Shown: piece after piece, positions 1-48,873 of the stretch
Layout: every line of letters begins with the position of its first letter
Position numbering within the stretch: position 1 is the stretch's first letter
Assembly (NCBI GenBank): GCA_965285935.1
Contig: OZ260661.1
Span: 138,508,001-138,572,000, forward strand
Direction of reading: 5' to 3'
DNA length: 64,000 nt
Origin: Ophelia neglecta
Taxonomy: Eukaryota
Notes under the pieces: generated by a model
Told to the model about the DNA's origin: nothing
Seen by the model: the letters and a program-made list of their open reading frames with translations, nothing else
The model's database searches: none
Program-made: the position numbers and the translations under genes

Positions 1-225
1 CTGTTAGAAAACTAGTCAGTTTGAAGCCTCTGAGTGGCCGTATGTTGTGTGTTCAGCAAGTGCCACTCCCAGATAGCATCCAGGTCCACAATATATGTGG
101 TGTCAAAGAGTACTTGCTGTCCCTCTACTTTGAGAACGAAAGAAGAAGTGGTGGAGGACCCATCAACAGAGTAGATTTCCACAAGGATGAAGAGTATGCA
201 ACTATCCAGTTTTCTGATCGAAAAG
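1..225 (+). CDS. Copy A exon: last PARP14/NMI-type RRM (NID-like) repeat
   Basis: IQVHNICGVKEYLLSLYFENERRSGGGPINRVDFHKDEEYATIQF; donor AAG|GTACAT at 225/226. Bases 1-129 are identical to 48274-48402. Confidence 0.88.
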
Positions 226-15200: not shown

Positions 15201-18200
15201 ACACATGAATAGAAAATACTTGACCAAGATCAGAATCTTGCTGTGTTGCATCACTCAATTTATTAAATGTATTATATTGGTTATGTTAACGACCAGATTG
15301 AAAAGACTATTGAGGAACCATGTTGTTTTTTGAAGTGATGGTTGATAACATTTCTACCACCAGTGGGGGGAATCTAAGAGCTACTAATGTTATCCACATT
15401 GTTGCTCAACGCGACACAAAATCTTGGAAAAAGGTAAATTTTTAAAGACACATACTGATATCAATTGGTTTATTGGTGTTTAATTCAATTACACTTTTAT
15501 TGCATTTTTTATTTCATAATATTTTAACACAAACTATATACATGTAGCTAAGACGTTAAGAAGGAAATAGTCATCGCACACCACACATCTGGGCACTTGG
15601 TTAATACGTATTATCCATATATTTCTCTCTATGTTGATTTGAAGCAAATTAGTTTCTTGGGTCTGATATGTTTTTAAATTTTAGATGTTGAATTGCGAAT
15701 AATAGAATACTTGCAATACTTTAGTCTGTGTAACTTATGCCGTCTCTTATGATAGATTATTCACAAATTAAATTTAAACCTCCTTAGCATGCTCCCATCA
15801 ATTTTATCAGAATCCAACAACTAGAAACTAATTCTGATTTTTTTAAATTAAACCCATTGCAATTATAAATATTTTCCCTAAACCCTTTGTTTTTGATATG
15901 CATTGGGTCATACGCTTGGCCGCGACCGCCTATTATTTTGCAATAATTTTACAACCATTAGATCTATATTAACTACATTCCACAGGTTTGGTATATTGGC
16001 CTGGAAAATTTGTTTGAAATATGTGGCGTCACCTTAGTACCTATACTATTTCCTCTACAGCAATATGATGTCAAAAGCTTTTGAACAAAATTGCGCAAAA
16101 CATTGGAGCTACGGGGCTGAAATCGTCTTTGAATTTATGGTTTTGGTTTTGGGGGTGGGTGCTACCCTTGGTTTGACAAAAGTGTTTTAGCAACAGTCAT
16201 GTTTACTATCCCTTTTGATTTGTTAACATCTGGTTGCTGAATGGAATAATTAACACTCGTCTTGATAAACAGCTTTATGTTTTAAAGAATCATTCCCTTC
16301 AAAATGCGCGCTTTCTTGTTAATATTGTTGAGGAAAATCAGTTCTAATTAAATTTGAAATAGGTAATAAAGCAATCTTTGGAGGAGGCAGAACGCCAAAG
16401 TTTTAGGAGCCTTACCTTTCCAGCCCTTGGTACAGGTATGTCAACATAATTTGAGATGCATATCATTACGTCACACTGTGTGACACTGCTGCATATTAAT
16501 TTGCTTCACTGTATATGATCTACGGAATGTAATGTACAGAAATCTCATTTGTGATCAATAGTTTATCTTTTCAGGTCAGTTAAAAGCTCAAGGATCTGCA
16601 ATGGCTAGTGTTATGTTGGACAGCATTGCAGCGTTTGCTAAAACCAAACCATCTAGCTTACACCTGGTGAGAATTGTCGTCTACCCGGGACAGTCACACA
16701 TTTTAGACACATTTAGAGAAGAGATCACAAAGAAAGCGACCCATGACAAAATGAGATATTGGTGGAAGTCCTTCAAGGAAGCTGTGTGTTCGTGAAAATA
16801 TTAGATTCTGTAAAATTAAAAAATAGACAATTATGCTAAACGATCAACGATCTTAACTTGCTTATTGTTTATTATTGTGATATTTGTTTATGATTAGCAT
16901 TCTTTATCTTTCTGTGGTTAAGTAGCCGTTTAAGTCACCACCTTTTATTTAGCTGGGATCAATACTAGTTTGACTGATGTAGATATACCCACTCAGTCAT
17001 ATGAACCAAATCAGCGGCTCCCGGCAAGAAGAGTCCCTCCAACTCCCGCACGAGTGACTAAACTGCGTGTGTGCGCAAGAACTATGGTGGAGGTAAACGC
17101 AGTCATAAAGGAGATAGTGGATATGTGTGATCATGAGTGTAAGGACAAGGTCTTGGACAAGACAGATGATCAGGAAAATATTGCTAAACTGGATGAGACA
17201 CAGGTATTGACACGATATACTACGTTGATGTTGTTTTTGAAGATATTTGAAAGTTTTTTGGTGAATTCGAAAGTAAACATAACATTGAGTTTATTTCAAT
17301 ATCCTTTTAACGCTTTACAATGAAACGTATTTATAATTTATTATTGAATTCAATATGCAGATTGCAATAATTAAGGGTCTTGCCCAAACATATGCTGTGG
17401 AAATAAGCATTGAAAAAACACCAACGGTTAAGCGGATCCATTTGCAGGGAATCTCTGAAGATATATCATCCGTTGTGGACAAAATGTATGAAATGTTTAT
17501 GGAAAATAATACAAAGGAACATGCGAAGTCAAAGGCTACCTTGATCAAAAAACAGGTAAACTCGTTTATCTGCTTTATTTCTTTACAACATAACCGTGAT
17601 AAAAAAAGTTCTGATTTATCCACATTCTTTCAAAATATTTCTTTCCTGAAATAGCTCATAGTGATGCAGTTATGCATTAAGTTAACCAATGCAGTGATAT
17701 CAAAGACAATCTTCTTCCAATAGGTTTGTCAGTCAATAAGCTATTGCTGCATGTAATGTAATCGGTATCAAGCATAACGTGTGCCAGGTTTAACAAACAC
17801 TTTCGCACTTTTTCCACTTCCAAAACTACATTTATCGGATCGACATTTTAGAATGGTACATGGACTTGACCAGTGAATATACCAATATACAAGCTTATAT
17901 GTAGAAACATGTACATTCATAAAGCTAACAATGACAAATGATTTTGACATGTATGTACAATTCTATTTTTTCACCAGTTGAATGACATGGTATGATTCTA
18001 ATGACATGTATACTAATTTTATTTCTCCAATGATGTTTCAAGACTTAGTAAGGATGAACCTAACACACATGTTAGACACCTGATTTGACTCATGATCCTG
18101 AAGAGGACGTATCCTTGTTGACACCCGTTTTAACTCCCAAGTTGCTGCTTCGAAATTGTCAACGCCCCCCGCCCCCTTCCCACACACACACACACACACA

Positions 18201-21200
18201 CACAGCCAACTATGTACGGATGCATTCATTCATTTTCATTCGTGACGTTCAAGGTCTGCCATTATACCCTTAGTAAATATACCCTTCATAAACAAATAAT
18301 ACATGGAAGAGGGGTCCCACCACAACATCCCTAAAATGGAGATCTAATTCATTGGGGTACCCACACTAAGCTCAACGTACAAGCCCCTCGCCATCTCCCT
18401 TCGGAAGAAAAATATAATAAAGGAGTTTTACGATGGCATTTATAGCCTAGTATTTTTCTATTTGAAATAATATATAATTGAAGCGTCTGGGTTAAAAATT
18501 GGGGTTAACCAACACGATTTTAATATCCCATGACCAACGCCCTGGTAGTAAACTCATGACCAATGCCCTGGAAGTAAACTCATTTAAAATTCAAATTAAT
18601 CCTTCTTCGGTTTTAATTTTTGCCACCAACATCCATCTTTTGTCTAACATGTGCCAATATCGTCTAGTGTATTGGTCAAGTAAAATGTTAAATTCTAAAA
18701 TTCATTATTCACTTTCTGTTTGATTTACCAATTTGTAATTTATTGTGGTGAAACAGGCTATGTCTGCAATTCTAGTGCATCCTTTATATAATCACATATG
18801 TATGCATTGACAAATTCTTTATAACTATTTGTTGCATTCGTTCTTCAAGTTTTTACTACAACATTACTGTGTTTCTGATCAAGCAATGTTCTTGCTGTGG
18901 TTAATATTCATGTAGTTGATTTGATCACAGGTTCAATGGCACTTTGAGAACAGTGGTGGTTTAGAAGGCTATCCAGAAGAAATTAACTGTAAGATTGAGG
19001 AGGCTTTTGATTCTCAACTGCCTGATGTAGAATGGATAGAGCAGGATGGTGAAAAGTTCAAGATAGACTTCAACGCAATGGTAGAAACCCAGATTGGCCG
19101 TGCTGGTGCGCGCGTTAAAGTTATAAGAGAAGCAAAAGGTCAGTAATAAAGACTTACAATCAATAAGTAAGTTTCTTGGAAAAAGGTTTAGCATGATATG
19201 TCTAAACTTGTGCGCTGTCAATGCTCAGATCGAAAGTTGTGGCCATGGATATTAAATAAAAATATATTTTAGGAATTACATTCCGGTGTTACATGTTCTG
19301 AGCTTCACTGCTGTCATGGACGCTAGTTTTGATCAACCTTTTTCGGCAGTTTTTTAATTATACTGATTGCAGCTTCAGAGCATCAATCACCTTCTCTGAT
19401 AGTATTTTTTCTGGTTTTGGTTGGCAAACAAGGAACATTCAAAATATCTATAAACTAACCCTATAATTCACACTGCCTTCCGAGTTATCAGCTCATTTGT
19501 GTGTATGATTCCATAGACTGCCAAAGAGGGCTTCATTGCCCTGTAATACCACGTGTTACTTAGTTTTGTTTTCAACAGAAATAATCCAAACTTGGAAATA
19601 AAATTTAATGGGAAAACAAAATAACAGTCGATACATGCCGCTTAGCGCTAACGATGTATTGAAGGTATATAGGAAATGCTTTATTAAGGTTTTCTTGGTA
19701 TTGTCAAATGTGACTTTGGACATTTTCAAGGTAAAAAGTAGGAAAGAAGGACAGAAAATGATTGGAAATTGTCTTTGCATGATTTTACAAAGACTTACCC
19801 CGTTATTTACATGTTCAGTGTTTTATAATAGAAAACCCTCTGTTTAGAATAGGATGAAGCGTATTTAAAGTAAGCAGTAACGTCTCCTTATGAGAATGTA
19901 GTTTTCAAAGTTTTCATAGTAGGTCCCAGTTTAGAAAAAAACGGGGAGAATGCGTAGCTTCAGCTGCTTATATTTCATCGGTGTGTATATATATATATAC
20001 AGATGGCCTTTACCATTTTATAGTTTTAATGGGGTCGACCCGTTTTCTATTTGAATCCGCCTCTCATATAATAGTCAGTGGTAGAGGTGGAGATTTGCAG
20101 GGAAATTTATTTTTTAATATTTTACATTAATTGTGGAAAATGTTCCCAATCTTGTATAATCCCCGAAGATATGTTAAACTAAGGATGAATTTCATTATTG
20201 TACAGATTATAGATATAGGTAAGACATATCTCCCATATTAATTTTCTCTATACCACCATGTTTTACATCCATTGAACATCCTCATGACTAGGCTTTTAGA
20301 TCTAGCCAACAAATGTCAGCATTGGATGCATTGCAGGAGCATGCTTTCCCGTGCCTTTGAACATGCCTGTACTGCATTTTTCATGTTACAGCCTCGCAAG
20401 CAGTTACAGCCTCGTAAGCAGTTTTATGTTGTTCTAGAAGTAACAGTTTAATCATATGGTTTCAGAGCTATCCTCACCTCCCTACTGATAGCTTTTAAGT
20501 GAAGACTTTTCAGGATGTTGACTGTACTGGCATCATTGCAAATAACCCCGAGTCAAAACAAATGTGCATTCAAACACATGATATGTATGAGATATCCTTA
20601 AGACATATTTGCGAAAACAACTTCATTTTTTTGTATATGCGATAAACTTTGTTTAAACGGACAACCTATTCATCATTGAAAATCCTTTTCCTAGCCCCCG
20701 CCTTTCTGGAGAAATGTTTGGGGGGGGGGGGGGGGAAATATTGGGCCATGACCTCTGCCACCACGCATATGATAATAAATCGATAGCTTTATTGCAATTG
20801 AACATAATTTGTTACTGCTAGTAAATATCAGCATAAATTATTTAACATATGACAATGCCGTTGTATTGTCAGATTTTCTAATAACCACTACACAGTAAGT
20901 TTAAATAAGCACATTAAGTTTTTGGTACAGATATTAATTAGATAATTAAGTTTTTTTTAAGATTTTTATATCTTTCTTTCAAGTCGGTTCATTAATGTAC
21001 TTTTAATGTCCTGTTTGCCATAATAATGGTATGTAATATAAATCACGCAATGAACAACAAGCTATAATCATTTTCATCATTAGACCATATACCAGTGCAA
21101 CTGAAAATTTATCTGCATCTTTCAACAACAAGAAAATGAAATAAAATCAATTTTAGTTGTGGAGGCCAATAATATTAGAGCAGCATTGTGCTCTCAAATT

Positions 21201-22370
21201 GCAGGAGGTGTTGTGGAAATACCGCCAAACTGGACCACAGTCGACCCAAACAAGCATTTTGAACTAGTGGCTCTTCAGAAAACTTCTGCTGAGTACCAAG
21301 ATGTGAAGGGTAAACTGAAGGCTACTGCTGGAGGGCACATCAACAAAATAATTAATGTAAGTAAAGCATCCACCCAAAATAATATAAATTGATAAAAACA
21401 TGACATTCGATCAAACTCATTTGTTTAATGTAATTTATCCTCTGATATAACATTTACTAAGTATTAAGCACAATAACATTTTATCAAACAGATCGAGAGG
21501 GTTCAGAACACCAGCTTGTTCAAGCAGTATGCCTTGCATAAGAAAAGCATGATGAAAGTCAACCCAACGGGAAATGTTGAGAATATCCTCTGGCATGGCA
21601 CCAGTGCCGACACTTTAGAAAGCATCAACAGATATGGTTTCAATAGGAGTTACTGTGGAAAAAATGGTACTTGCTATAATTGATACCTTGTATGAGAACT
21701 ATAATGGCATTTGGGATCTCTTTCTTCCAAAGGCTAAGTAATAATAATTTTACATTAAACACCCAATTGATGCAGTGTTATTTTTAAACTATTATATAGA
21801 AAGAATAATTGCCTGCAAGCCTGTATTGTTTTAAGTCGTCAGGTTTCAAAAACTGCAAAAAAGGATACGCATATATGGCACTTGTCTTCATTTTAATGCA
21901 GGACAATCGAGATTATTTCTTTATAATTTATGATTTATTATTTCAATAGTTTGGTGTTTACAAACAAAAGATCAAATCTGCTTAAAGAACAAAGCTTAAT
22001 GTTGTAGCATATGGATTATTCTAGGGTAGACTGTGATACTGTTCAATCATAAACCAGTTGCTGCTCTTTACAAGTTTTATTTTTTGCAGCCGTACTCCTT
22101 GGTAACGGAGTATACTTTGCCAAGAACGCATCCTACTCGTGTTCCAGTAAGTATTCTCGTCCTGATCCTAATACCGGCCATAAGCACATTTATATGTGTA
22201 AAGTGCTGACAGGAGACATTGCTAAGGGGGCTGGTGGAATGAAAGTTCCTCCAGTAAAATCTGCATCAATCCTGTATGACTCCGTTGTGGATAATGTTAG
22301 TAACCCATCAATGTATGTGATATTTAATGATACCCAGGCTTATCCTGAATACCATATCACATTTTCATAA
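1..22370 (+). CDS. PARP14: PARP14-like mono-ADP-ribosyltransferase, copy A (5'-partial, 23 exons, ~1470 aa in window): RRM-KH block-macro-macro-KH-WWE-ART
   Basis: Hand-spliced GT-AG exons with consistent phases: <1-225, 488-951, 2142-2282, 2463-3291, 3613-3756, 3879-3953, 5321-5427, 6917-7009, 8840-8971, 9428-9512, 11578-11702, 13063-13180, 14715-14885, 15130-15195, 15336-15433, 16363-16435, 16575-16787, 16953-17203, 17361-17555, 18931-19138, 21205-21356, 21492-21666, 22090-22370 (TAA). The joined frame is open. Motifs: YFENERRSGGGPI, FPAIGTG, GDITQESTDAIINST, LWHGT, GFNRSYCGKN, GVYFA, QAYPEY. The symbol means PARP14-like; strict orthology is not established. Confidence 0.9.
488..3756 (+). 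CDS. Copy A exons encoding the central KH-like repeat block (488-951, 2142-2282, 2463-3291, 3613-3756)
   Basis: ORFs 502-1005 and 2490-3317 plus two small in-phase exons. They lie between the RRMs and macrodomains, as in PARP14, and end in the PARP14-like ...DVNKPGMGKYF motif. The KH assignment rests on position and alpha/beta pattern, not on a profile search. Confidence 0.75.
4140..5188. mobile_element. HINE/DINE-1-like non-autonomous element in a copy A intron
   Basis: Subterminal inverted repeats CCTCCGCC / GGCGGAGG, a nearby 5' inverted GGAGG, a (GTCC)n microsatellite, and ggtcaaattgag repeats. Confidence 0.55.
5321..11702 (+). CDS. Copy A macrodomain I (5 exons)
   Basis: Spliced: VLVTLAIGGIELQK|VDVIVNTTSRNIDGKSGVSRAMFNAAGPGLQ|LETRQCVPLNPGSIAVTSGQNLQCKHIYHV...|...SIAFPAIGTG|NNNVPRDKCAELL...VRFVIYD. 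All macrodomain motifs are in the expected order. Confidence 0.88.
10152..10243 (+). mobile_element. Residual 5' stub of the same L2 LINE in copy A
   Basis: Encodes WMEVNMLKLNQDKTEIMFF and aligns to B ~54925-55020, after which homology breaks. Confidence 0.7.
12560..12990. repeat. Interspersed repeat with recurring AAAGGTCAAGGTC units (also B ~58900-59340)
   Basis: Three roughly 130-150-bp subunits ending in aaaggtcaagg. The family was not identified. Confidence 0.5.
14715..16787 (+). CDS. Copy A macrodomain II (5 exons)
   Basis: Spliced: LQLELGDITQESTDAIINSTDKSIDLTM|GGVANALAKAGG...|...TTSGGNLRATNVIHIV...|...SLTFPALGTG|...VRIVVY. Confidence 0.9.
18181..18204. repeat. (CA)n microsatellite
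   Basis: cacacacacacacacacacacaca. Confidence 0.95.
18931..19138 (+). CDS. Copy A WWE-domain exon
   Basis: VQWHFENSGGLEGYPEEINCKIEEAFDSQLPDVEWIEQDGEKFKIDFNAMVETQIGRAGARVKVIREAK matches the WWE pattern (W...Y..E....IEEA....IDF..M). CAG acceptor and GTCAGT donor. Absent from the ORF track. Confidence 0.85.
21205..22370 (+). CDS. Copy A PARP catalytic (ART) domain, 3 exons
   Basis: IPPNW...SAEYQDV...|IERVQNTSLFKQY...LWHGTSADTLESINRYGFNRSYCGKN|AVLLGNGVYFAKNASYS...KVLTG...YDSVVDNVSNPSMYVIFNDTQAYPEYHITFS*. Confidence 0.95.
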
Positions 22371-24149: not shown

Positions 24150-24316
24150 NNNNNNNNNNNNNNNNNNNNNNNNNNNNNNNNNNNNNNNNNNNNNNNNNNN
24201 NNNNNNNNNNNNNNNNNNNNNNNNNNNNNNNNNNNNNNNNNNNNNNNNNNNNNNNNNNNNNNNNNNNNNNNNNNNNNNNNNNNNNNNNNNNNNNNNNNNN
24301 NNNNNNNNNNNNNNNN
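24150..24316. other. Assembly gap (167 N), preceded by a (CTG/CTA/CAA)n microsatellite
   Basis: N run; left flank ctgctgctgctactacaacaactactact. Confidence 0.99.
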
Positions 24317-36028: not shown

Positions 36029-38467
36029 GCTGTCTCATTGGACCCAGTGGCGGAAGTTTCCCGAGTCAATAAAAGGCAATCAAGAAAAGAGACAAATGAA
36101 GGATCAAATGTGAATAGTGGTATGTACTTAGATATGAACTTAACTTTTAATATTGTATCAATCTCCTCTTCACCTTGTGTTATTGCACTCCCCCTTTACC
36201 GAGAAAAACACAAAAATAAGTACATTTATATGGCTTCCTCCTTTATCTTCACCGCTTTGAAACGAAATCACATCATCAGAATATCTGAATTATGTCGGCA
36301 TTTTATATATTTGCAGTAAAGGCTGTATTAATTAGAGCAGAGAAAAATAACACAGGGGCATAATACTTTCTATTAGTTTGGAAAAAAAATTGTCAGTGAC
36401 GCTGAAACTACCTACTGTAAATTTTATTATTCATTCATCACTGGCCTTGACATTCATTTCAATTTTGTATCGCTCCATCAATTGTTCATAAAATCATTGG
36501 ATAGGTAGACATGTGCATAGCTGTCTAAGGTGGAGTTATATTGTTTACAAATTTTGGGTTGATTATTTAAGAAAAAATCTAACAAGTGTCAGTTCAACGT
36601 GCAGCAGCTCTGCTTTATGTTTATTAAATTCGTATATGTGTCAAATTGGAATTAAATGCTGTCACTGACCTAAGTGTAGCCAGGGTGGAGCCATATAAAA
36701 CACGATGTTCCAAATCCAACCATTTATATAACTGCATAAATGATAACACATATTATTAAAAATTGTGCAACGCTGAAGCATATGGTTCATGACAAGGCAA
36801 TAACCACCTAACCATCTAGCTTTGCCAAATGAATGCATAGTTATCTGTTATGGGCAAGAACAAAACTTGCCTCTATTTGACCCCACCCCATATATATGTT
36901 CCAATATAGTGGTTCTGAGGGAAGCCCTTTTGTATTCCCTATCTCATTTCCTTCACATTTATTCGATTGTAGTACGAGCTAGAATACGACAAATAGAAGA
37001 AAATTCTGGTAGTGCTGCTGGAAGTACGTCAGCAAGCGGATCTAGTAATCCTGGCCCTGCCAGAAGAAAAGTAGGAAGACTTCCTACTTGCATATTTAGG
37101 GCGCATATGCCTCAGACAACGGAAGACAACAAAAATGTACCTATTGCTTCTGCAACGCAGGTAAAGCACTCTGATAAGATTTAAATGCCAATTTAACATT
37201 TAATGCACACATTTCCATCAACACAAAAAAATGCAAGATTCCTATAATTAAAATTTACGGCAGCCGATTCAAACTTGTGTGATGCTTGGTGATCCCGTGG
37301 TTTGCAAATAGTTTGTATTTTTTAACGGGGAAAGGGGGTATGAGAGGGTGTCTAACCATTTGGTCATATGTTATTTATCGTAAAGATATATCTCATAAAA
37401 ATTTATTTTAACGCATATCGAAGAGAATATGTATAAACAGATGATTTTGTTTTCAATTTATATATAAGCACTTTGATAAGATTTAAAGGTTCATATTACT
37501 ATAAAAACATACATTAATGCAAACAACTGCGTCCCAACATTCCTAGATTAAAAATATACGCAAGGCGATTCAAACTTGTGTGATAACTGATGACCCAGTG
37601 GTTTACACATACTTTGCATTTTTAAGGGGGGCAGGGTGTATAAAAGGGTGTCCAATCATTTGGTCATTTGATATGTATCAAAATGATATATCTCTTAAAA
37701 CTGATTTTAACATACATCGAAGAGAATATGTATAAACAGTTTGTTTTTTCTGTTTTCAATTAATTCTTAATACATTGCATAACACGTCATATTTTAATTG
37801 AAGGTCAAAGAACCAGTCACAAAAACTACAGCATTCACTACTCAGAATATAGAATCCAGTGGAAGTGGTGATTTAAAGATCTCGTACACAGAAGACAAAG
37901 CCGTAATTACCTCACAGAAAGCAGATGGTATGTCTAACAATCGACTAATAGTACAACGAACGATTAAACCTCTCTAGCATTGTACACCAAAGGATCTCAC
38001 CAAGCAATGTGTTATCAACAGCCTGAACGTAACTTGTTCACTTGTCCGAAAAGTGTATTCAATCTGGTCCTTAAACCAGTGGATGGTTCACATGCCCGGA
38101 TAGCATTTGTTTTTATTTCTTTCATGGTCCACAATTACAAATTAACTGGTTTAGCTATCTATAATATGCAGATGCGGACGGAAGGGAAAATGACGAGGTC
38201 ATTGCTGTATTAAACACCCCTCCAGACACTGTGGACCCTGATGTCACAAAGGATGACCCAAAAGAAGTTTCTATGGGTATTAATGTGGAGCGTATAAAGA
38301 AAACGATTTTCTCTTTTGGCTTCAAATACTACAATGCTTTTATATATCATATTGTTAACGCATTATTACATATTCTAAAGCTGCAGTAAACAGTCAACCA
38401 GAATACTCTTTGGAGTCCTTTGATAGTGTGGGGTTCAGACCGGTCGAAATACTTGACAGTGTGAAAG
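36029..38467 (+). CDS. Copy B N-terminal low-complexity exons (5 exons)
   Basis: GT-AG exons with compatible phases, open into the RRM array (AVSLDPVAEVSRVNKR...; VRARIRQIEENSGSAAGSTSASGSS...; VKEPVTKTT...SGSGDLKISYTEDKAVIT...). No recognisable homology, so support is splice and phase consistency only. Confidence 0.6.
37164..37762. repeat. Old intronic tandem duplication, 2 x ~300 bp
   Basis: aagcact(c/t)tgataagatttaaa...cgattcaaacttgtgtgat...atcgaagagaatatgtataaacag occurs twice, at 37164 and 37466. Confidence 0.85.
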
Positions 38468-39548
38468 GTAGGTATACATGTGTAATATATAGATGGGTAG
38501 GTAAAGTGTTCTTTGATGCTCAACTGATGTTCGAATGATTTCTAGTCTCGCTTCATTTTTTGTAACTTATGGAAGATATTACATAAATACCGAGAAATGT
38601 TTTCAAGATGATACATTAATTATCAAAATGGAATGAATGCTATGGCTGCTTGTATTCTTGTTGGAAGGTGCAATTAATTATTTTTTATTTACAAAAAAAG
38701 TGCATTAATTAGAACATAACTATTGTGGCTTGGCCAATCCCGAGCAAGCATTTACCATGTTATATTTTGTTAAAAGGCATGATGAAAGATACTATAAAGC
38801 ATTGTACCATCAATAAGCCGTTGCTACTGAGGACTGTATGCCCTCGGATATTCCAGCAGTACCTACATAATAATATATATCTGCTGAGTGCCAATTAACA
38901 GTCTTTAAAATAGTAGTTTGAAAGGTTAAAGATTAAATTTTCCATAAAGACAGTAAAAGGGTGCGAATGGACTTTAAAAATGACTCAAAACAGTCCCAAA
39001 TTTTTAAAATCTCTTCTTGCCTATAATCAAGCTAGTATTTGGTCTTGCAAATATTACTATGACCATATATGGATATCACTGCCTGCATGGAGATTCCAAT
39101 CTGAAGGATGTTCCAGCCAAGTCAATCTGTACCCTTGGTTGAAAGCCGCCCTTGCATGTTAGCGAGTAGGCCCAGCCATTACAAGAGGATTCAACTTTTT
39201 CCAATGATGGCAGGTGGCCAGTCCACAAAGGGGGACAGCCATGCTGACATAATTTAGATCAATTATAATATGCAGCAGATTTTACTAATGTTTCCCAGCT
39301 TTATGAAATGTTTAAAGTGCTCAGGTTTCCCGTTGCACTTTATACAATTTCTTCATGGGTCTATCAAGTCATAGAACCTCAATTATTTGTTGTTTACTGA
39401 ATATACCATTGTTCGGTTTTATACATCATAATACTATTTCACTTACTATTCATCAGTAGGGACCCTCGAGGTGGAATTATATAGCATGATATATTTTGCA
39501 TGCATACTAGTGTATGAACATACTATTTTAAACCATTCTTAATTGCAG

Positions 39549-42500
39549 ACACAAAACGTCCCACTAAAGCTGACTTTTCAACACATGTGTTTCTCAACCA
39601 AACCCAACTCAACGCTATTACTACTGAATCTAGTCTCAGAGAAAGACTTGGGAAACCCAAAATTGGTGGAGAGATTGACTACAATCGACCTGACAGTGAC
39701 ATACACACTGCAAGAGTTAAATTTAAAGACCCATCAGGTGAGGTCACTACACTTGATGAGTGTCATTTCAAGGGAAATTTATGTGGAAATTATTACCCGA
39801 TATTCCTCCATTTGTCTTTTTTTAGATTCAAGTCTGATGCATTCTAATATTACACAACTTAGCTAATTTGCACCCCACCCCCACCTACCACCACCCCACC
39901 GCTTTTGAAAAAAAATTGGGGAATATGTATTGGGCCTCCTGGCAGTCCATTTGCCATAACACCACTGCTGAATCCTTTTGTTTTGGCCGTTGCTGTTGTT
40001 GTTTGGGGTTTTACGTGGCTTTCAACACTTATCGAGCCTACTTGTGACAGTGGGCTCAATGCCCTCTTTAAAGTGCTGCCTCACTGGAGTACCTGCCGTA
40101 GACACCAGACAGGGAACCCCTCCCAGTCACATTATACTGACACCGTGTTAAAAAGTCCTGATACTACCCCCAAAATACCGGGCACCTGGCAGGGGAGCAA
40201 TCAGTACCTAATTTTACGTCTTAGGTTTGATGCAATCGAGGTTCGAACCCCGATCTCCCACTTGCGAGGCGGACGCCCTAACCACTCGGGCACGCTTTGG
40301 TGGTCTTTTGGCTGTAACTAAGTAAGGCCTCGATTCACAGAAATCATTTGGTAGTTATTGGTGTGCTTGGGACTGGGAATATATATTTTTACAAATTTAC
40401 TACTACTTATACTCAAGTCACAAATTTTTTCATGACCTCTTTTTGATAACCACTCATTCAGCTCACCCAACCATTAACAATTACTTAAATTAGTATTTTG
40501 TACTTTCAGATGATGATGAACACAAATGTGACAAAATTGCTACTGATTTAAACACCGATGAAACTTGTTTAGATGCTAAGAACCCGAATGAAGAACCAGA
40601 GCTGCCAAATGAACCCCAAAGAGTGATTAAGGTGAAGGGAATCAATAAACGAACACTAAACGCTACGCTTACCTACTTTTTTGAGAGCAAGAAGAGATCT
40701 GGTGGTGGTGACGTTGAAGAAGTAGTGCGTTCTGAGGGCTCAACAGAAGCGAAAATTACATTTAAAGATCCCAAAGGTAATTAAGCATCCTGTTTATTGA
40801 AGCAAAGTAGTGTCATAGTAAATGGATACAGCAGTCCCTGCAATGTGCCGTCCTTGTAATGGGCACTCTCCTGCAATGGTTGGCCATTATTTTAATGGAC
40901 CGATTGTCTTTCCATTATAAATTCCTGAAATGGCCGCCACCTATCGGGTGAAGCCGAATTTTGTTTATGACAGGGATGTGATTGCAATTAGCCAATCATA
41001 ACTGAGGACACACAGCCAATTCACTGAGGCAATACACAGTATCAACAGAGCAGGTCATTAAATGTGTTTGTTTGTTGTGTGCTAATTGCACAGACATCAT
41101 GGATGTGTCTGGTTGATCGACACGATTTTTTTACAGGCAGTCTTTTTGTAACAGCTGGATTTGGCTGTGCTGGAGCTTGTATGGGGATCAGTCTTTGATC
41201 TTTGTTGGACAAAATGGTGTCTTTGACAGCTTCATTTTGTTTATATATGGCAAATGTGTTTGTCCGTGGTAGAAATTGATGACTGGGGTGTTAAAAAAGA
41301 CATAAAAAATTCATCATTTCTGCCTTTCATTTAACAGCTAAATCCTAGATCAACATTGGATGCATATAGGGAAGCATATTTGTCACATCTTAACAAATCT
41401 TCAATTTAACCTTTGGGTCATTGGCATTATAGATGATTTAGTTTAGAATTAATGATTAAATTTTCAAGCTTGGGTACATAAATTTTGCCGGGTGTCCTGT
41501 CCATCCGGTGAAGGGCCAAGTGCAATTTAGGCCACTTTTGCTCTGATGGAGGGTCGGCCTCACATCGCAGGGACTGCTGTATTACCAAACAGGAGAAAAA
41601 ATCCTTATCTTTGTATGTATCAACCAAACAGCAATTTAAAGTCATGTCTCCACCCTCTTGGTATCACAGAAGAAGGCAGAAACTTAGTGAATATTTAGCC
41701 CATATGTCATCCCTTAATCAATGTACTTTTCAATACTCTCGTTATTTGAACTATTTGTAAGGTGTACGTTTTGTTTACAGATGCTGCCAATGTGCTCCAA
41801 CATGGACCTTTGACTCTGGAAAAGTCCAAGCTAGAAGTAACATTTGATACCAATGAGAATGTTTTAGATGCTGACTCGCAGAAGAATACTGTTCTAGTGA
41901 AAGGTTCGAAAATAATTTGAAGATAATTATAGTTAAATAAAGTGGAACATTGTTTTTTTAATTCTCTTTTTAATTATGTCCACCAAACGTTGTAGGAGAC
42001 ATTTGTTTACATGCCATTTGGTAGCTCGCCATTTGGTGTCTAGTGTCCGGCATCAAAATTTATTTGTCGCATGATAAAGGAAAACACCTGCTTTTTTTAA
42101 TTATTTTTTTTGGCTGCAAGAATATGCCATAATTCTGTCTGGCATTGTCCGAACATAAAAAATTGCAGTCTAACTTCTTAATATGAATAAAGACCTTAAA
42201 TTAATATCAAGTGCAAATATAAATGTTTGGGCTGCGAATTTGTTGGTGTTTCAGATGTGACCTTCATCTACAACTTCAAGGTACATAAATTAAAATCAAG
42301 ATTCTACCTTTAATAATAGCGGATAGAAACAAAATCATATAAGATTTATCTAGCAGTTAATTACGCTGGGGGTGTAACATGGTTATTGGGAAAAATTGCT
42401 ATTAGGGATATTTGGAATGATATAATTTTACCTGGGGGTAACAACCATTTCATTATCCCCCCCCCCCACCCCAATTAAAAATTGATGAGCCCTTAGTGCC

Positions 42501-45500
42501 CGTTGAGATCAGCAAATGAAACATTGCAAAAAATGTCACACTGATCCATCTGCTGCCCATGTCATTGTTGACACTACAATTGGAAATAAAAAATTTAATT
42601 TTATTCTTCATATTTACCCCATTTAGGCCTGTTTATTTACTGTTTTTATCTCATGTGTTTCCCAGGGTTGAAGCAGAGCATCTCGTTTGATACCATTGAA
42701 TGTTTTTTCGAAAACAAGCGACGTTCCGGAGGAGGTGAAATTAAGAAGGTAGACTACAATACTTCCACAGGAGAGGCTAAGATAACTTTTGTCAACCCTG
42801 AAGGTAACAACCTAGCAACAAAACATTTTATCAGCAGTAATCTGATGTTATAGTGGCTGTTGAGCCCACAAAAGCCGGACAATTTTTATATAAGTTTGAT
42901 ATATTAAGTGATGGCCAAATAATATTATAATATGAAAATGAAAAAGCAAGTCCAAATTTTGAAGTTATCTTAAAAGAAAACATGTGTATATAAAAAAAAT
43001 TCAAGAGCAGGCTGGAAACATAGAGGCAAGCAAAACATTGGGACAAAAGTAGAGCTGAAGGCAGACCGACATATGGTCGCTCCCAGGAGAAACCTTTTAT
43101 TTATCTATGATTAATGTTCCCTATTTTAGCATACAAATTATTTCACTATCCCTTAACTTAGCATTGGGTCATCACTGGTTTTTGTGAGGCTTTTAATTTC
43201 GCCAAGTTTCCGCCAAGTTGTGTCAGTCAAGATTTGCGTGGGACGCCATGTCTCTTGAACCGTTCATGGGAGTCTTTAATAGATGCTTGTGCTGACCTAA
43301 ACAGATTTTGGGTCAGATCGGAAAAACAAAATGGTCACCATTTTACAATAGTGAAAAATGTCATCTTTTCAGTGGCTAATGTTGCGAGATAGTCATATTA
43401 AATTTATTGAACTCTAATAGGAAATCATATACAAGGAATCCAGTGGTGACCTCGAATTTGACCTTGGATCTTTTTGCATGCTGAAATTGAGACATAACAT
43501 ATTTTAGGATGTGTTCCTAAACACCTTGTTTCTTTAATTATTAATTTTATTATATTACAGACGGATGTATTGATTTATTGTGGATAGATACATTTTTCTT
43601 TGTTGGCCAGGTTTCCCCTTTATTTGAGATCTTCTTATGTTATAAACAATTTTTTATATTATTTTTTATAGTTGACAGTACTTCACTAATAGGATGATTA
43701 CTTATAATCCAATTTTATTTCAAATTAATATTAAGTATAACCTGGGTCTATATATATTTCTAATTTATGGCCAATATGATTTTCGTAGAACTATTTTAAG
43801 AAATACTTTACTTCTGAATAATAGGTGTACAATTCAAATATATTTAACATGGCTGGGTTTTGAAGCCGCAACCAGCAAGGAGCTCATGGATAAATTTGAC
43901 TCTGCCATTGTATCATATTCCCATCTCTCCAAAGACTTAAATTTATTGAACGTTTTCAGCTGCTGCGAGGGTGGTTGAGAGAGAAAATCTAAAATTGGAA
44001 AACACCCCCCTCACAGTATCCTGGTGGATTGACAATAAAGGAGAGGTGTCTAAATTAGATTCTGAAGATTCATCCGAAGAAGATTTTGCAATAATAGTAA
44101 CAGGATTGACCACCAAAATATCAGATGACACTTTGCAATGTTTCTTCGAAAACAAAAAGCGAACTGGTGGAGATGCAACTCTTGTATATGAAAGACTTAG
44201 TGAAAACCATGCAAGAATTGCTTATGAAAATAATGAAAGTATGTTTTTTTTTCACTTTAACCTATTAAGCCCTCTTAATGTTCCACATTGCGTTTGGGCT
44301 ATATTATGTTTGGTTTTGAGTCTGTCAGTCAAGCATGGCAGCCATCAGGTTTTATATAATATACTCTGAATTGGCGGTCGGCACAAGAAACTTAAACTTG
44401 TGAGCTCGTTTTGGTTTTGTCTTGTGTGTCTGTTTGTACAGCCTAGTGGCCAGAGTTTACAACCTGGTTTCGATGAAGCTTCTCACAATAATTGACCACA
44501 ACATGGCAACAATGTATTAAATTGCTGTTTTAAGCCAACTTAAAGTAAAGATTACATCAATAAAATGCTTCAGAGAATAGCTGCGCATGCATATGTTTAA
44601 ATTAGCATATTTAAAGCTAGGGACTAAGGATTTAGAACAAATTTAATTCTTAATGTTAATCTTTATTTCTGCTGAGTATACACATCTGTGTTTTGAATTA
44701 CACAAATGATTCTAAGTCACTTTTATATGTTGTGATCTGTCATTTACAGCTGCCAAGAGAGTTCTTGAAAATGGGAATTTCACACTCGATGGAGTAAAAC
44801 TGACTGCTCAAAAAATGACTGATTTTGAACCAGTAAAAAAGGAGATCCCTCCCAGAGATACAATCCTAGTGAAAGGAATCGGTAGCCAAATTTCAGAAGA
44901 AGTAGTCTCACTGTTCCTTGAGAACAAAAAACGTTCACATGGTGGTCCTGTCTCACGAATGAAGTATGATCCAGTCAATGAGACTGCATTAGTCACATTT
45001 GACAATGCTGAAGGTTAACTCCAATTTTATTTTGTAGCATAGTTTCTTTATAATAATCTTGAAAGTCACTGTTATTAAATTTGCTTAATTGTCAGATTTG
45101 AGGTGGCTGTTGGAACATTGGCTTTAGGTGGTAATGTCTCTTTTGATTTTAATATTATTATATTTATATTGACCTGATGACTCAATGGTAAAATGGAAGG
45201 TTCCAACACAATTCTACATCAAAGTTAAGGCTCCTAGCTTCCTTTAATCGACTATGAAGCTTTGAACTTCTTAATGTGATCATATTTTTGTTAATATAAA
45301 TAATATACTAATTTTTATTTTGTATTTGTACTTTAGATGCCAACAATGTTGTACAGAAAGGAACCTTACTTCTCGATGGACAGACATTAATTGCTACATG
45401 GCCTGATATGGCTGATAAAGAAAACACCAGTGACACAGCAGGAAGTGAATTGCCATTGTCCAGGTCGCTGATGATACGGGGCTTGAATCCTAAAACTCAC

Positions 45501-48443
45501 CAAAATGTAATTAACATGTACTTCGAGAACCATAAGAGATCAGGCGGGGGCCCAATTGACGGAATACAACACGATGCTAAGAGGGGCACAGCCTTCATCA
45601 CTTTTAAAACTGCTGATGGTAAGCCAACTTGGAAGTACTTGAAAGCTTAATTTACTTTACAGGCATATCAGATTGATAGACATTTCCCTACGTTAATCAA
45701 GTTTTTATGACAATTTGATTAGACCATTGTAAGGAAGATTAAATGTTTTTCAGTGGTATACAAATATTTATGTAGCTAAAACTGCTATGTATTCTTTCAA
45801 AGTAAATACTTTATGTTGACAATAGTGTTGAGTGTAACGACCTGTGACTCTTTACAGCAGCCAAATCAGTGTTGCAGAAAAACAACCTTAAACTGGAAGA
45901 TTATCAACTTGATGTAGAAAGAGCGGACATAAAGGCTAAAATGCCTAAGCCAGCAGTCTCCATAGATGAACCTAAACCAGTCGCAGCTATAGAAGTCAGT
46001 GGGTTTGCTGAAAGTGCCACTGAAATATCCGAAGAGATGCTGCGACTATTCTTTGAAAATAAACGCAGCTCCGGAGGTGGAGACATCAAATTTATAAATC
46101 TGGACAAAGATAATGGGGTCGCAGCTATAACATTCATGAATGCTGAAGGTATCAAAAATTGGTTTTTATTACTACCATACATTTGTAACGAAAAGAGTTA
46201 AAGACAACATCCAATCTAGCACTCAATTTTCACTAAAATGTAAATTCACCCCAATTCAAATGAGATTCCCATACTCACTAAGAAGTAAACTATTTCGTTT
46301 TGTCACAAAAGAATATAAAACTTGCGTTTGCTCACCTCTTGAACTAATCGAAACAGCAGATCGCCGATCGTGTGACTTTTTTTTTAGCAACACCGTCTGT
46401 TACAAAACCCCACTGTCTGAAACAAATGCCAGTTATAGTCGGGTGTTTTTTGCTTTTGTGAATTCCAATGTTTTGAACAAATGTGACATTTGGGGGGTCG
46501 GGTTCTGGTTCATTTGTTGGCAAAATTTGGCCATTTCTTTCTCTGCTTTTCTCACATTTTTTGCATTTTCAAGTGTTTGGAGCAAAGAAAATATTTCAGG
46601 GTTCAGGTTTTTGCTTTTCAAGTATCTCTTTGATGCATAAAAATTGATTGGGATATTGAAATAGATGTCTGTAATTGGGTAATTCCTTCTTTAACTATGG
46701 TACATTGTATAAAAAGAGCCTCGTTTCAAGCTAGTTGTTTTAAATTTGTTTACAGATAATCAGCAGCAAACTATTTTTTTTAAATACTCTGCAACAAACA
46801 ATGTTTACAATTTGTTCAATATATTTTAGTCGCCCCCCCCCCCCTCCCCCTTCCATGAAGTTTTGTGATTTACGGCAGGTTGTCACAGAATATGGAAACG
46901 CATGTAAAGTGAATTATTATTGGTTGTACCGCTGCTGCATCCAAATATATATTGCGTTGCCATTTCCGAATAAGCACTGACAGGACGATTTATCCGCTCT
47001 TGCCCATGCCTATCACCGGCCCATCATATTGTTGTCTTTTCTTCTGATGTCACACACTCAAACAAGCGGAGTGGCTTGTTCAGCTCTGTAAGTCCGAGAA
47101 CTGTTCCGAGAGCATTAGTTGCCGTGTTTTTTCTTTTTTTTTTGAGCACATTGTGCAGAGAGCAAAATATTCCAGTTCTGACAGCACTTTTATAAAATAC
47201 TGAAATATCTTTTTCTCTAATAATTGTGTCAATGAAAAATTTACTGGTTATTATCTTTAACATAGCAAGTATCCCACAACACTAAATTTGAACATCACTC
47301 TGATAAAATCCGACTTTAATTCTTTTCTGTTAAGATGCAAACGAGGTTTTGAAGAAAGGAACATCCAACCCATTCCAACTGTTTGGGGTGCCATTGAATG
47401 TAAGAGGTCTCGAGATAGAAGTTCCAGCAGTGAGTTGTGCAATAGAAGTCAAGGGTTTTCCAGCGGACACAAATGAAGACCATATTGTAATGTTCTTTGA
47501 GAATCGTCGGAGGTCAGGGGGTGAACCCATTGAAGCAATTCATTATGATGTGCCAAATAGGCGTGCAATCATAACCTACCCAAATATTGAAGGTGCGTGT
47601 GATCTTTTAGGAGCCATCTTATTATTGGTCAATTAAATAGCATATTTAACTTGCTATACAATCAGAATGAACAAAAATCATGTTGCATTTTGCTAATTTT
47701 CTGTTTTGTAAAATATTATCATAATTGACCTTTCCTCTTGTTTCTCTCCATTCATTCTAACGGACATCCCTGGCATTAAACTGAATGGCTAATGTAACAA
47801 TTTGTATTTAAGCCCCTCAGAGAGTGATACAAAAGCAACCCCTCGTGCTTGATGGTGGAACTTTAAACATCAAGATATTACAACCTGCAAGACCAGTAGC
47901 GCCAATACATGGACCAGTTGACAAGGACAAAATCCTAGTCAGTTCTCTAGATGAGGATACCCCATCTGAAGACCTGGTATTGTTTCTGCAGTGCACCGCG
48001 GATTGTATGGTCAAACAGGTTCAGTTTGGACTGACAGAGGGAGTAGCCTTGGTGGAATTTGATGGTATCCCCGGTAATTTTTAAATCTACTTATTCTGAT
48101 ACTGCACAGCAATAAATATAAATATGTTTAGAGATGGTTAGCTTCAAAACTGATACATCAAGTAAACAGATAAATATATAGTTGATTTAGTTAAGATCAT
48201 ACAGTCAGATTTTTATCTTAACGTCAGGATCAAACAGATTTTTATTATTTCATGCCTTTACCAGATTATGATGCTGTTAGAAAACTAGTCAGTTTGAAGC
48301 CTCTGAGTGGCCGTATGTTGTGTGTTCAGCAAGTGCCACTCCCAGATAGCATCCAGGTCCACAATATATGTGGTGTCAAAGAGTACTTGCTGTCCCTCTA
48401 CTGTAGAAAGTCGACATTCCGTTACCGTACAGCAGGTTGGTGA
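39549..48443 (+). CDS. Copy B tandem RRM/NID-like repeat exons
   Basis: Recurrent motif: FFESKKRSGGGDV, FFENKRRSGGGEI, FFENKKRTGGD, FLENKKRSHGGPV, YFENHKRSGGGPI, FFENKRSSGGGDI, FFENRRRSGGEPI, plus a variant repeat (47813-48073). Each is followed by an A-x-I/V-T-F-like strand. All introns here are phase 1 and the frame is open up to the deletion junction. Confidence 0.88.
39989..40295 (-). mobile_element. tRNA-derived SINE with a Meta/MESC-like core
   Basis: Minus strand: A-box region CCGAGTGGTTAGGGCG, B box GGTTCGAACC, core ...CGGTGTCAGTATAATGTGACTGGGAGGGG..., and an (AAC)n tail. Confidence 0.75.
40829..41579. mobile_element. Tc1/mariner-like MITE (751 bp) in an RRM-array intron
   Basis: TIRs CAGCAGTCCCTGCAATGTG / CACATCGCAGGGACTGCTG (18/19 match), with TA on both sides. 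Confidence 0.85.
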
Positions 48444-48873
48444 TGAAAAAAAGGAGAAACACTATCACCCAGGAAAAAGAAGTCCTGCAACCACAGGTAA
48501 GTTGATATAGATAGTGCTCAAGTTATTTGTTTCAATTGATTTTATTTTGGAAGTCAGTACACAACTGGACTGCTTTCGACCAATAGCAATAAAGCAAAAC
48601 ACTTTTTATTATTCTTAGGTAGTGAGGTTGAGTTGGTAGACGGAACGCCAGCCCCAAAGAAGGCAGCCCTTCGGAGAAGTGTGGCCACTGCAGGTATATG
48701 TATATTTTGATAAGTTTACTTATTAGAGAGAAACTGCTATTTAAGAATCTGAACAAACATAAAATAATATTTATTTGTTCACTTAATATCATAAATTCAG
48801 ATGTCATGTTAGTTTTAATCATTTTCAACATTATTTTTAGTCTATATTTCGGTACATCAATATGCTATCTATT

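What the first reader, a model, noticed from the sequence alone, without database searches (positions are those of the whole stretch)
37804..48402. Greatly expanded RRM/NID array in a PARP14-like gene, built from symmetric phase-1 exon cassettes
Seen: about 9 repeats of the (F/Y)FEN(K/R)xRSGGG-type RRM plus 2 degenerate ones (37804, 39549). Every intron from 37927 to 48265 is phase 1, and all 12 exons from 38226 to 48073 are multiples of 3 (51, 87, 189, 267, 123, 138, 279, 264, 282, 291, 258, 261 nt). Most exons start with the last helix and strand of one repeat (A..V....L.L.G..L) and end after the A-x-I-T-F strand of the next. Known: human PARP14 has only about 3 N-terminal RRMs. Inference: the array grew by exon duplication. 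Skipping a full-repeat exon keeps the frame and yields complete but chimeric RRMs, which could act as a combinatorial nucleic-acid or pathogen-sensing module on an ADP-ribosyltransferase of about 2440 aa or more.
Basis: partly seen in the sequence, partly recalled or inferred. Interest (0 to 1): 0.8.

Follow-up and report, generated by a model that had tools for sequence, protein, structure and literature searches.

The report
Eleven-RRM array of annelid PARP14-like gene
This stretch really encodes a run of about eleven PARP14-type RRM domains built from in-frame, skippable exons, but the same layout is found in PARP14-like genes of many invertebrates, so it is an ordinary member of a little-described family, not a unique expansion.

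Summary
All 12 exon lengths, the AG/GT sites and the phase-1 introns are reproduced. Seven exons match Pfam's PARP14 RRM models. Each exon carries helix 2 and the last strands of one RRM, a linker, and strands 1-3 of the next.

The expansion is not special to this gene. A profile of the exon units finds 2045 proteins. PARP14 homologues of brachiopod, molluscs, echinoderms, hemichordates and amphioxus carry 5 to 15 units; human PARP14 has 3. The Lingula and Argopecten genes use the same phase 1-1 offset exons. In those species the units are near-identical recent duplicates. Here they are old (mean 28% identity).

Exon skipping would keep the frame at every junction. RefSeq lists an Argopecten isoform that lacks exactly one 282-nt RRM exon, and Haliotis isoforms that lack one or two units. 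No RNA data exist for this species, so combinatorial sensing is untested.

The classical RNA-contacting aromatic positions are almost all non-aromatic. The conserved basic FEN-K/R-K/R-R-SGGG loop matches the PARP10 loop that drives RNA-independent oligomerisation. I therefore favour a multivalent assembly scaffold.

Copy B has a 3.5-kb deletion at 48402 that removes the KH exons and brings a stop 13 codons later. The roughly 2440-aa enzyme fits the upstream copy A only.

The scan had already noted PARP14-type RRM arrays fused to kinases elsewhere in this genome.

The parts
37804..37927 (+). Exon E0: doubtful degenerate RRM N-half. Donor at 37927 is phase 1; the 5' boundary is uncertain.
   Evidence: Open frame and GT donor. 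hhalign to the unit profile E 0.04, probability 1.3%. No Pfam match. 6 of 6 A/B differences are nonsynonymous, at 37811-37851. Not found in paralogue C.
38226..38276 (+). Exon E1, 51 nt, phase 1-1, small linker exon.
   Evidence: AG/GT and open frame. 100% identical in copy A, absent from C.
38381..38467 (+). Exon E2, 87 nt, phase 1-1.
   Evidence: The only open 87-nt AG...GT phase-1 candidate between 38277 and 39548. Two copies at 91% in paralogue C.
39549..39737 (+). Exon E3, 189 nt, phase 1-1; degenerate RRM N-half.
   Evidence: AG/GT. hhalign aligns it in register with unit positions 49-92, E 0.006, probability 6%. No Pfam RRM match.
40510..40776 (+). Exon E4, 267 nt, phase 1-1; linker plus RRM strands 1-3, motif FFESKKRSGGG.
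   Evidence: PF23085 E 2.3e-9, profile positions 3-52 of 82. Kept gapless with AG/GT in copies A and C; duplicated in C.
41781..41903 (+). Exon E5, 123 nt; helix 2 and last strands, linker and strand 1. It is one unit split by an extra phase-1 intron.
   Evidence: Unit profile positions 1-47. AG/GT. E5+E6 = 261 nt, one unit length.
42666..42803 (+). Exon E6, 138 nt; helix 1 to strand 3 of that RRM.
   Evidence: PF23085 E 3e-7. Unit profile positions 48-93.
43960..44238 (+). Exon E7, 279 nt, full offset unit.
   Evidence: PF23085 E 2.9e-5. Alignment A1.
44750..45013 (+). Exon E8, 264 nt, full offset unit.
   Evidence: PF23085 E 1.6e-7. A1.
45337..45618 (+). Exon E9, 282 nt, full offset unit.
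   Evidence: PF23085 E 5e-9. A1.
45858..46148 (+). Exon E10, 291 nt, full offset unit.
   Evidence: PF23085 E 4.1e-7; weak NID match, E 0.02. A1.
47335..47592 (+). Exon E11, 258 nt, full offset unit.
   Evidence: PF23085 E 8.8e-8. A1.
47813..48073 (+). Exon E12, 261 nt; offset unit whose RRM N-half has lost the basic-glycine motif.
   Evidence: Aligns over the full length in A1 but has no Pfam match. In the unit tree it groups with position-equivalent units of Lingula, Argopecten, Patella and Branchiostoma, support 100/95.
48265..48402 (+). Exon E13, truncated in this copy; the start of the last RRM before the KH region.
   Evidence: 100% identical to copy A up to 48402. Homology then jumps to copy A position 3661. 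The frame runs 13 more codons to a stop at 48441-48443. The intact copy A version (window 54-221) matches PF23085 at E 2.3e-9.
1..22367 (+). 3' part of the upstream tandem copy A: last RRM exon, KH, Macro, KH8 and PARP catalytic exons. This is the context that shows the gene type.
   Evidence: tblastn with Lingula, Haliotis and Ruditapes PARP14. Pfam: KH_PARP14_1 (487-939), Macro (8837-8950), KH_PARP14_8 (17352-17651), PARP (21477-21677 and 22089-22367).

Best explanation
Window 37804-48402 is the N-terminal part of one paralogue (copy B) in a tandem cluster of annelid PARP14-like genes. It encodes about eleven tandem RRM-fold domains of the PARP14/PARP10/NMI-IFP35 (NID) type.

Each domain is split by a phase-1 intron between strand 3 and helix 2. 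Each roughly 260-290-nt exon therefore carries the back of one RRM, a linker and the front of the next. All these exons are symmetric (phase 1-1).

This design is inherited. It is shared with brachiopod and bivalve PARP14 genes. It makes tandem exon duplication, exon loss and exon skipping frame-neutral, which explains why unit number varies from 5 to 15 or more among invertebrates and between paralogues in this genome.

Function (inferred, not shown): the array works mainly as a multivalent protein-protein assembly scaffold. The conserved basic loop FEN-K/R-K/R-R-SGGG of one RRM would contact acidic surfaces of other RRMs, as in PARP10 oligomers and condensates. This would concentrate the mono-ADP-ribosyltransferase in copy A, or give an RRM-only NMI/IFP35-like protein in the truncated copy B. 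Some contribution to nucleic-acid binding is possible.
For: Shown:
- Exon and phase arithmetic.
- PF23085/PF23222 matches on seven exons, stopping at profile position about 50-52. Genome-wide, at least 120 PF23085 exon hits nearly all stop at the same position.
- Copies A and C keep exon lengths, open frames and AG/GT. Ka/Ks is 0.36-0.41, and exons are more conserved than introns in B versus C.
- The profile search finds 2045 relatives, many with 5-15 units. They are named PARP14 or PARP14-like in Lingula, Ruditapes, Patella, Haliotis, Biomphalaria, Argopecten, Anneissia, Patiria, Ptychodera, Glandiceps and Branchiostoma.
- In Lingula PARP14, 19 of the first 20 introns mapped (the RRM part and the two after it) are phase 1, with six 273-nt exons. 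The Argopecten RRM exons are all phase 1-1.
- The AlphaFold model of relative P0083 gives two RRM folds, with the exon boundary between strand 3 and helix 2. Foldseek's top matches are tandem-RRM proteins.
- PDB matches: PARP10 RRM 2dhx at E 7e-8 and NMI NID at E 9e-5.

Inferred function:
- In PARP10, R34-R36 lie in the same FENRRRSGGG loop aligned. They mediate head-to-tail RRM1-RRM3 contacts and RNA-independent condensation (PMC13710856).
- NIDs are RRM folds that dimerise by salt bridges, and an EMSA was negative (PMC13196095).
- In the window's nine units, only 2 of 27 RNP1/RNP2 stacking positions are aromatic (read).
Against: - No transcript evidence exists for this species, so splice sites and expression are unverified.
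- Human PARP14 RRMs are needed for recruitment to nascent DNA (PMC12891911). The RRM-KH train was modelled as tracking a long single-stranded nucleic acid (PMC10450202). Nucleic-acid binding therefore cannot be dismissed.
- The oligomerisation role is transferred from PARP10 and NMI/IFP35, not tested on PARP14-type arrays.
- Copy B may be a pseudogene: it has the 3.5-kb deletion. A-B Ks is only 0.015, so A and B could even be two haplotypes placed in tandem by the assembler.
Confidence: 0.6

Rival explanations
1. Reader's model. The symmetric exons are alternatively spliced in many combinations. This would yield a repertoire of isoforms with different numbers of RRMs and hybrid RRMs (front of one, back of another), used as a diversified nucleic-acid or pathogen sensor.
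For: - Every single-exon skip gives a sense junction codon and keeps the frame.
- RefSeq isoform X3 of Argopecten irradians PARP14-like lacks residues 495-588, which is exactly the 282-nt phase 1-1 exon 12378-12659 of L017.
- Haliotis rubra isoforms X3/X4 lack one 88-89-aa unit, and X5/X6 lack two.
Against: - The skipped units in both molluscs are near-identical neighbours. The isoforms could be read-mapping artefacts of automatic annotation, and they would not create truly hybrid domains.
- Patella and Lingula isoforms differ only at the N-terminus.
- In this gene the units are only 19-41% identical, so hybrids may not fold.
- No RNA data for this species.
- Canonical RNA-contact residues are mostly absent.
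Confidence: 0.12
2. The array is a genuine nucleic-acid binding train. Together with the KH domains of copy A, the tandem RRMs would follow a long single-stranded RNA or DNA and aim the ADP-ribosyltransferase at its phosphorylated ends.
For: - The RRM fold.
- Sequence similarity to hnRNP A1 RRM2, E 2e-5.
- The human PARP14 RRM-KH helical model and in vitro nucleic-acid ADP-ribosylation (PMC10450202).
- RRM-dependent recruitment to nascent DNA (PMC12891911).
- The basic loop could bind phosphate backbones.
Against: - RNP1 positions 3 and 5 and RNP2 position 2 are aromatic in only 2 of 27 cases.
- PARP10 RRM condensates contain no detectable RNA (PMC13710856).
- The NID EMSA was negative, and the corresponding surface is acidic (PMC13196095).
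Confidence: 0.2
3. Copy B is a decaying duplicate, or a mis-assembled second haplotype. Its RRM array has no function of its own.
For: - The 3.5-kb deletion cuts exon E13 and removes the KH exons; a stop follows at 48441-48443.
- A-B Ks is 0.015, within the allelic range of marine invertebrates.
- Contigs of the public runs break at 48402, and none listed bridges it.
Against: - All other exons are intact with AG/GT. A-B Ka/Ks is 0.36, though it rests on only 16 differences.
- RRM-only proteins with 6-10 units exist in other species (P0011, P0032, P0002), so a truncated product could be functional.
- Downstream A/B identity drops to 94-96%, which is higher divergence than expected for alleles.
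Confidence: 0.25

Closest known systems
Human PARP14 (ARTD8/BAL2)
   Same: The same domain families in the same order: PARP14-type RRMs, KH_PARP14, Macro, KH8 and the PARP catalytic domain (PMC13224862).
   Different: Human has 3 RRMs. This gene has about 11 (9 recognisable plus 2 doubtful). Copy B lacks the KH region through a deletion. The WWE domain and catalytic residues were not examined here.
Lingula anatina PARP14 (XP_013403401.1, 3094 aa)
   Same: A long array (15 unit matches) followed by KH, Macro and PARP. Same offset exons, with 19 of the first 20 introns mapped in phase 1.
   Different: Lingula has a recently triplicated two-exon block (six 273-nt exons, near-identical). The window's units are all old and divergent. 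Sequence identity between the species is only about 30-40% per unit.
Argopecten irradians and Haliotis rubra PARP14-like RefSeq isoform sets
   Same: Phase 1-1 RRM exons of 252-288 nt. The annotated isoforms differ by exactly one or two units.
   Different: The skipped units are near-identical duplicates. There is no isoform information for the annelid gene.
PARP10 RRM1-3
   Same: The same RRM subtype and the same FEN-R-R-R-SGGG loop (2dhx, E 7e-8). That loop mediates RRM-RRM oligomerisation and condensation (PMC13710856).
   Different: Three RRMs in a compact triangle, no macrodomains. Reported only from vertebrates (PMC4245714).
NMI / IFP35 NID domains
   Same: An RRM-fold domain related in sequence (NMI NID, E 9e-5; weak PF07292 match). 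It acts through homo- and hetero-oligomerisation (PMC13196095). A truncated copy B would be a similar enzyme-less protein.
   Different: Two NIDs per protein and no basic-glycine loop conservation shown. The Pfam NID score in the window is below the cut-off.

Membership tests
PARP14-like macro-PARP (clade 3) | N-terminal PARP14-type RRM domains (PF23085 / PF23222) | tested here: met
   Seven exons score above the PF23085 cut-off (24.5-37.7 bits against 24). The last RRM in copy A scores 37.6 bits.
PARP14-like macro-PARP (clade 3) | Type I KH domains of the PARP14 kind | tested here: inconclusive
   Copy A: KH_PARP14_1 at 20.6 bits (cut-off 21) and KH_PARP14_8 at 17.4 bits (cut-off 27), scored on single exons. 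tblastn to the Lingula KH region gives E 4e-23. Copy B: the first KH exons are deleted.
PARP14-like macro-PARP (clade 3) | Macrodomain(s) | tested here: inconclusive
   An exon fragment at 8837-8950 matches Macro at 21.3 bits (cut-off 22). tblastn hits to the macro regions of relatives are present in both copies.
PARP14-like macro-PARP (clade 3) | C-terminal PARP catalytic (ART) domain | tested here: met
   Copy A: PF00644 at 44.7 and 30.6 bits, with 53-60% identity to the C-termini of Lingula and Haliotis PARP14. The end of copy B lies beyond the window and was not examined.
PARP14-like macro-PARP (clade 3) | H-Y-(L/I) mono-ART catalytic residues and a WWE domain | not tested
   Outside the finding; not examined.
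Canonical RNA-binding RRM | beta1-alpha1-beta2-beta3-alpha2-beta4 fold | tested here: met
AlphaFold of P0083 gives pLDDT 76-88 in both domains. Foldseek finds tandem-RRM structures at E 3e-10.
Canonical RNA-binding RRM | Aromatic residues at RNP1 positions 3 and 5 and RNP2 position 2 | tested here: not met
   Mapped through the hnRNP A1 alignment onto the units. Only F in E9 (RNP1-5) and Y in E13 of copy A (RNP1-3) are aromatic: 2 of 27 positions.
NID (NMI/IFP35 domain, PF07292) | Pfam NID match above the cut-off | tested here: not met
   Best match is 15.8 bits against a cut-off of 25, on E10. The unit profile does hit the NMI NID structure 21nh at E 9e-5. The domains are related, but this is not a member by Pfam's criterion.
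Alternatively spliced cassette-exon array | Symmetric exons, so that skipping keeps the frame | tested here: met
   All 12 exons are multiples of 3 and phase 1-1. All skip junction codons are sense codons.
Alternatively spliced cassette-exon array | Transcripts of this gene that lack single cassettes | not testable with these tools
   No RNA run holds the stretch. The three runs found are DNA-like contigs that cover introns and show no splice joints. The only support is in relatives, from RefSeq isoforms.

The most novel reading that the evidence does not exclude
The phase 1-1 RRM cassettes are skipped in regulated combinations, for example after infection. One PARP14-like gene would then yield many isoforms that differ in RRM number and carry hybrid RRMs. 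That would be somatic-style diversification of an innate-immune ADP-ribosyltransferase. The same shuffle-ready module would also be used on kinases, GVIN-type GTPases and E3 ligases in invertebrates.
Probability: 0.1. Interest if true: 0.7.

Novelty: new member of a known kind. Interest (0 to 1): 0.35.

Why it matters
PARP14 is a much-studied interferon-induced antiviral enzyme, yet the role of its RRMs is largely uncharacterised. The two PARP14 reviews and the PARP-family survey I read do not mention that invertebrate homologues carry 5-15 such RRMs encoded by frame-neutral, offset exons, and my literature searches found no paper on it. That natural variation in valency would suit a test of whether these RRMs act as nucleic-acid readers or as multivalent assembly modules. 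The exon design also explains how the module spread to other immune effectors. This particular gene adds little beyond another example, and the copy studied is truncated.

Tried and rejected
- RNA evidence. The look-up of sequencing runs returned only three runs from one sample and study, none on record as RNA. When laid on 42700-48650 they cover introns and show no splice joints, so they are DNA. Their variants match paralogue C or a mosaic of A and C. They therefore cannot settle whether A and B are separate loci, nor confirm the 48402 junction.\n- Haliotis rubra gene DNA for exon mapping could not be fetched: the gene range is 208 kb. Argopecten was used instead.\n- Pfam and hhalign gave no convincing support for the two 'degenerate' units.\n- tblastn with three relatives found nothing upstream of 40545 in copy B. 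A scan for ATG first exons gave no credible candidate. All searches used single exons by reference. The total protein length (about 2440 aa) and an AlphaFold model of the window's own RRMs or of hybrid RRMs were therefore not computed.\n- The N run at 24150-24316 was left untouched.\n- Rejected: recent intragenic duplication in this gene. The units are 19-41% identical and long-branched.

Full report
**What is in the sequence**

The window is AT-rich animal DNA; earlier notes on this genome call it an annelid. On the + strand between 37804 and 48402, open frames carry the recurring motif FEN-K/R-x-R-SGG.

I enumerated AG acceptors and GT donors in phase 1. Twelve lengths all divisible by three would occur by chance about twice in a million. 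All junction codons are sense codons, mostly Asp or Ala. They continue the consensus seen in relatives (strand 3, then D/A, then the helix that begins AxxVL).

Each exon was searched singly, by reference.

**Domain identity**

- Seven exons match Pfam PF23085 (PARP14, third RRM) above its cut-off, and PF23222 more weakly. The match always lies at the exon's C-terminal about 50 residues and covers profile positions about 2-52 of 82.
- The front of each exon aligns to the last helix and strands of the domain.
- An AlphaFold model of a small relative (P0083) gives two RRM folds: strand 1, helix 1, strands 2-3, helix 2, strands 4-5. The exon-unit boundary lies between strand 3 and helix 2. Foldseek returns tandem-RRM proteins.
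- The closest solved sequences are the PARP10 RRM (2dhx, E 7e-8) and the NMI NID (E 9e-5).

The count needs a small correction. There are seven motif-bearing units. One unit has lost the motif (47813-48073). One is cut before its motif at 48402. Two 'degenerate' units have only weak in-register similarity.

**Gene context**

- A self-comparison shows a tandem duplicate. B 48274-48402 equals A 1-129. B then continues at A 3661, so B lacks 3.5 kb that in A holds the rest of the last RRM exon and two large KH exons.
- Read straight through, B stops at 48441-48443.
- Copy A runs on through KH_PARP14_1, Macro, KH_PARP14_8 and PARP catalytic exons to about 22367. The family assignment (PARP14-like) is therefore sound, but the full enzyme belongs to copy A.
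- The window is G000:C1:138508001-138572000. Copy A's array lies just upstream and has exactly the same exons, gapless, 95-100% identical.
- A third copy, C (from 138434001), has the same set plus extra copies of E4, E5 and E2.
- In all three copies the nine main exons keep their length, open frame and AG/GT. Ka/Ks is 0.36-0.41, and exons are more conserved than introns between B and C. These are coding exons under moderate constraint.
- Genome-wide there are at least 120 exon-level PF23085 hits, in clusters on C1, C5 and C9. Nearly all end at profile position about 50-53, so the mid-domain intron is family-wide.

**Relatives**

A profile of seven exon units, run against 1.84 billion representative proteins, gave 2045 hits (77 at E <= 1e-30). 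Unit matches per protein:

| Species (protein) | Unit matches |
|---|---|
| Lingula anatina PARP14 | 15 |
| Ruditapes | 12-13 |
| Branchiostoma | 11 and 9 |
| Patella (two species) | 10 |
| Biomphalaria | 9 |
| Crinoid Anneissia | 8 |
| Haliotis | 7 |
| Patiria, Glandiceps | 6-7 |

. Human PARP14 has three RRMs (PMC13224862, PMC10450202). The array is thus large only by vertebrate standards.

I mapped two gene models onto their DNA.
- In Lingula, 19 of the first 20 introns mapped (the RRM part and the two that follow) are phase 1, and six exons are exactly 273 nt.
- In Argopecten, the RRM exons (189, 282, 282, 288, 252, 234 nt) are all phase 1-1.

The offset, symmetric exon is therefore at least as old as the common ancestor of annelids, molluscs and brachiopods.

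A tree of 58 units shows that in most species the units cluster by species on very short branches. That indicates repeated, recent, lineage-specific exon duplication. The window's units are long-branched and only 19-41% identical to one another.

One unit, E12, groups with the position-equivalent unit of four other phyla (support 100/95). This suggests a conserved C-terminal anchor next to a variable part.

Repeat number is thus neither fixed nor unique.

**Exon skipping**

Arithmetic shows that any single skip keeps the frame.

In relatives, RefSeq lists Argopecten isoform X3 without residues 495-588, which is exactly one 282-nt exon. It also lists Haliotis rubra isoforms without one or two 88-89-aa units.

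These are automatic models, and the skipped units are near-identical neighbours, so mapping artefacts are possible. Lingula and Patella isoforms differ only at the N-terminus.

For this species no RNA run could be found. The three runs that hold the stretch behave as DNA. The combinatorial reading remains possible but untested.

**Likely mechanism**

I mapped the classical RNA-stacking positions through the hnRNP A1 alignment onto the nine units. Only 2 of 27 are aromatic.

The best-conserved feature is the basic loop after helix 1. In PARP10 the three arginines of this very loop contact an acidic patch on another RRM. This builds head-to-tail oligomers and RNA-free antiviral condensates (PMC13710856).

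NMI and IFP35 NIDs, also RRM folds, dimerise through salt bridges and gave a negative EMSA (PMC13196095).

I therefore favour a multivalent assembly scaffold whose valency is tuned by exon gain and loss. Nucleic-acid binding is the main rival: the RRM-KH train was modelled on single-stranded nucleic acid (PMC10450202), and RRM-dependent recruitment to nascent DNA has been reported (PMC12891911).

The same array also sits on URGCP/GVIN-type GTPases in a clam, and stands alone as RRM-only proteins. Earlier notes of this scan report it on about 45 kinases in this genome. This fits a shuffle-ready module.

**Verdict**

The feature is a new member of a known, database-annotated but little-discussed kind. 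Interest is modest.

Noticed in passing
window 48402/48403 versus window 129/3661: Copy B lacks 3.5 kb that is present in copy A. The missing piece holds the rest of the last RRM exon plus two large KH exons. The B frame reaches a stop at 48441-48443. Contigs of the public runs break at 48402 on both sides, and none listed bridges it.
   Followed up: partly
window 39990-40310: A repeat of about 320 bp inside the E3-E4 intron has more than 30 copies at 89-90% identity on many contigs of the genome. It is probably a SINE-like element.
   Followed up: no
window 43297-43495: The summed contig depth of the public runs jumps to about 70,000-145,000, against about 20-150 elsewhere. This is a very high-copy repeat inside the E6-E7 intron.
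   Followed up: no
G000:C1:138434001-138464000 (L010+L014+L011): Paralogue C has extra copies of exons E4, E5 and E2 upstream of the regular set. RRM exon number therefore differs between paralogues of one genome.
   Followed up: partly
window 1-17357 versus 48274-64000: A/B identity is mosaic: 100%, 98.2%, 93.8% and 95.8% by segment. Ks in the RRM exons is only 0.015. This could be a very recent duplication with gene conversion, or two haplotypes assembled in tandem.
   Followed up: partly
P0023, P0035 (Mercenaria mercenaria); gene next to Lingula PARP14 in L016:1-327: PARP14-type RRM arrays also sit in front of URGCP/GVIN-like GTPase domains. In Lingula they sit in a gene with Macro, RING and DTC domains. 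The array looks like a mobile module of invertebrate immune effectors.
   Followed up: partly
window 47813-48073 (E12): This motif-less unit groups (support 100/95) with the position-equivalent units of Lingula, Argopecten, Patella and Branchiostoma. It may be an ancient, position-specific unit next to the variable part of the array.
   Followed up: partly
window 37811-37851: All six A/B differences in exon E0 are nonsynonymous and clustered in its first 16 codons. The true exon may start later (for example at the phase-1 acceptor at 37853), or this part may not be coding.
   Followed up: partly
G000:C1:138590886-138602674: About 19 kb beyond the window's end, another paralogue carries the segment homologous to window 36590-38314 (E0-E1) three times in tandem at 70-77% identity.
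   Followed up: no
window 24150-24316: A run of 167 N between the end of copy A and the start of copy B. It was left as it is.
   Followed up: no
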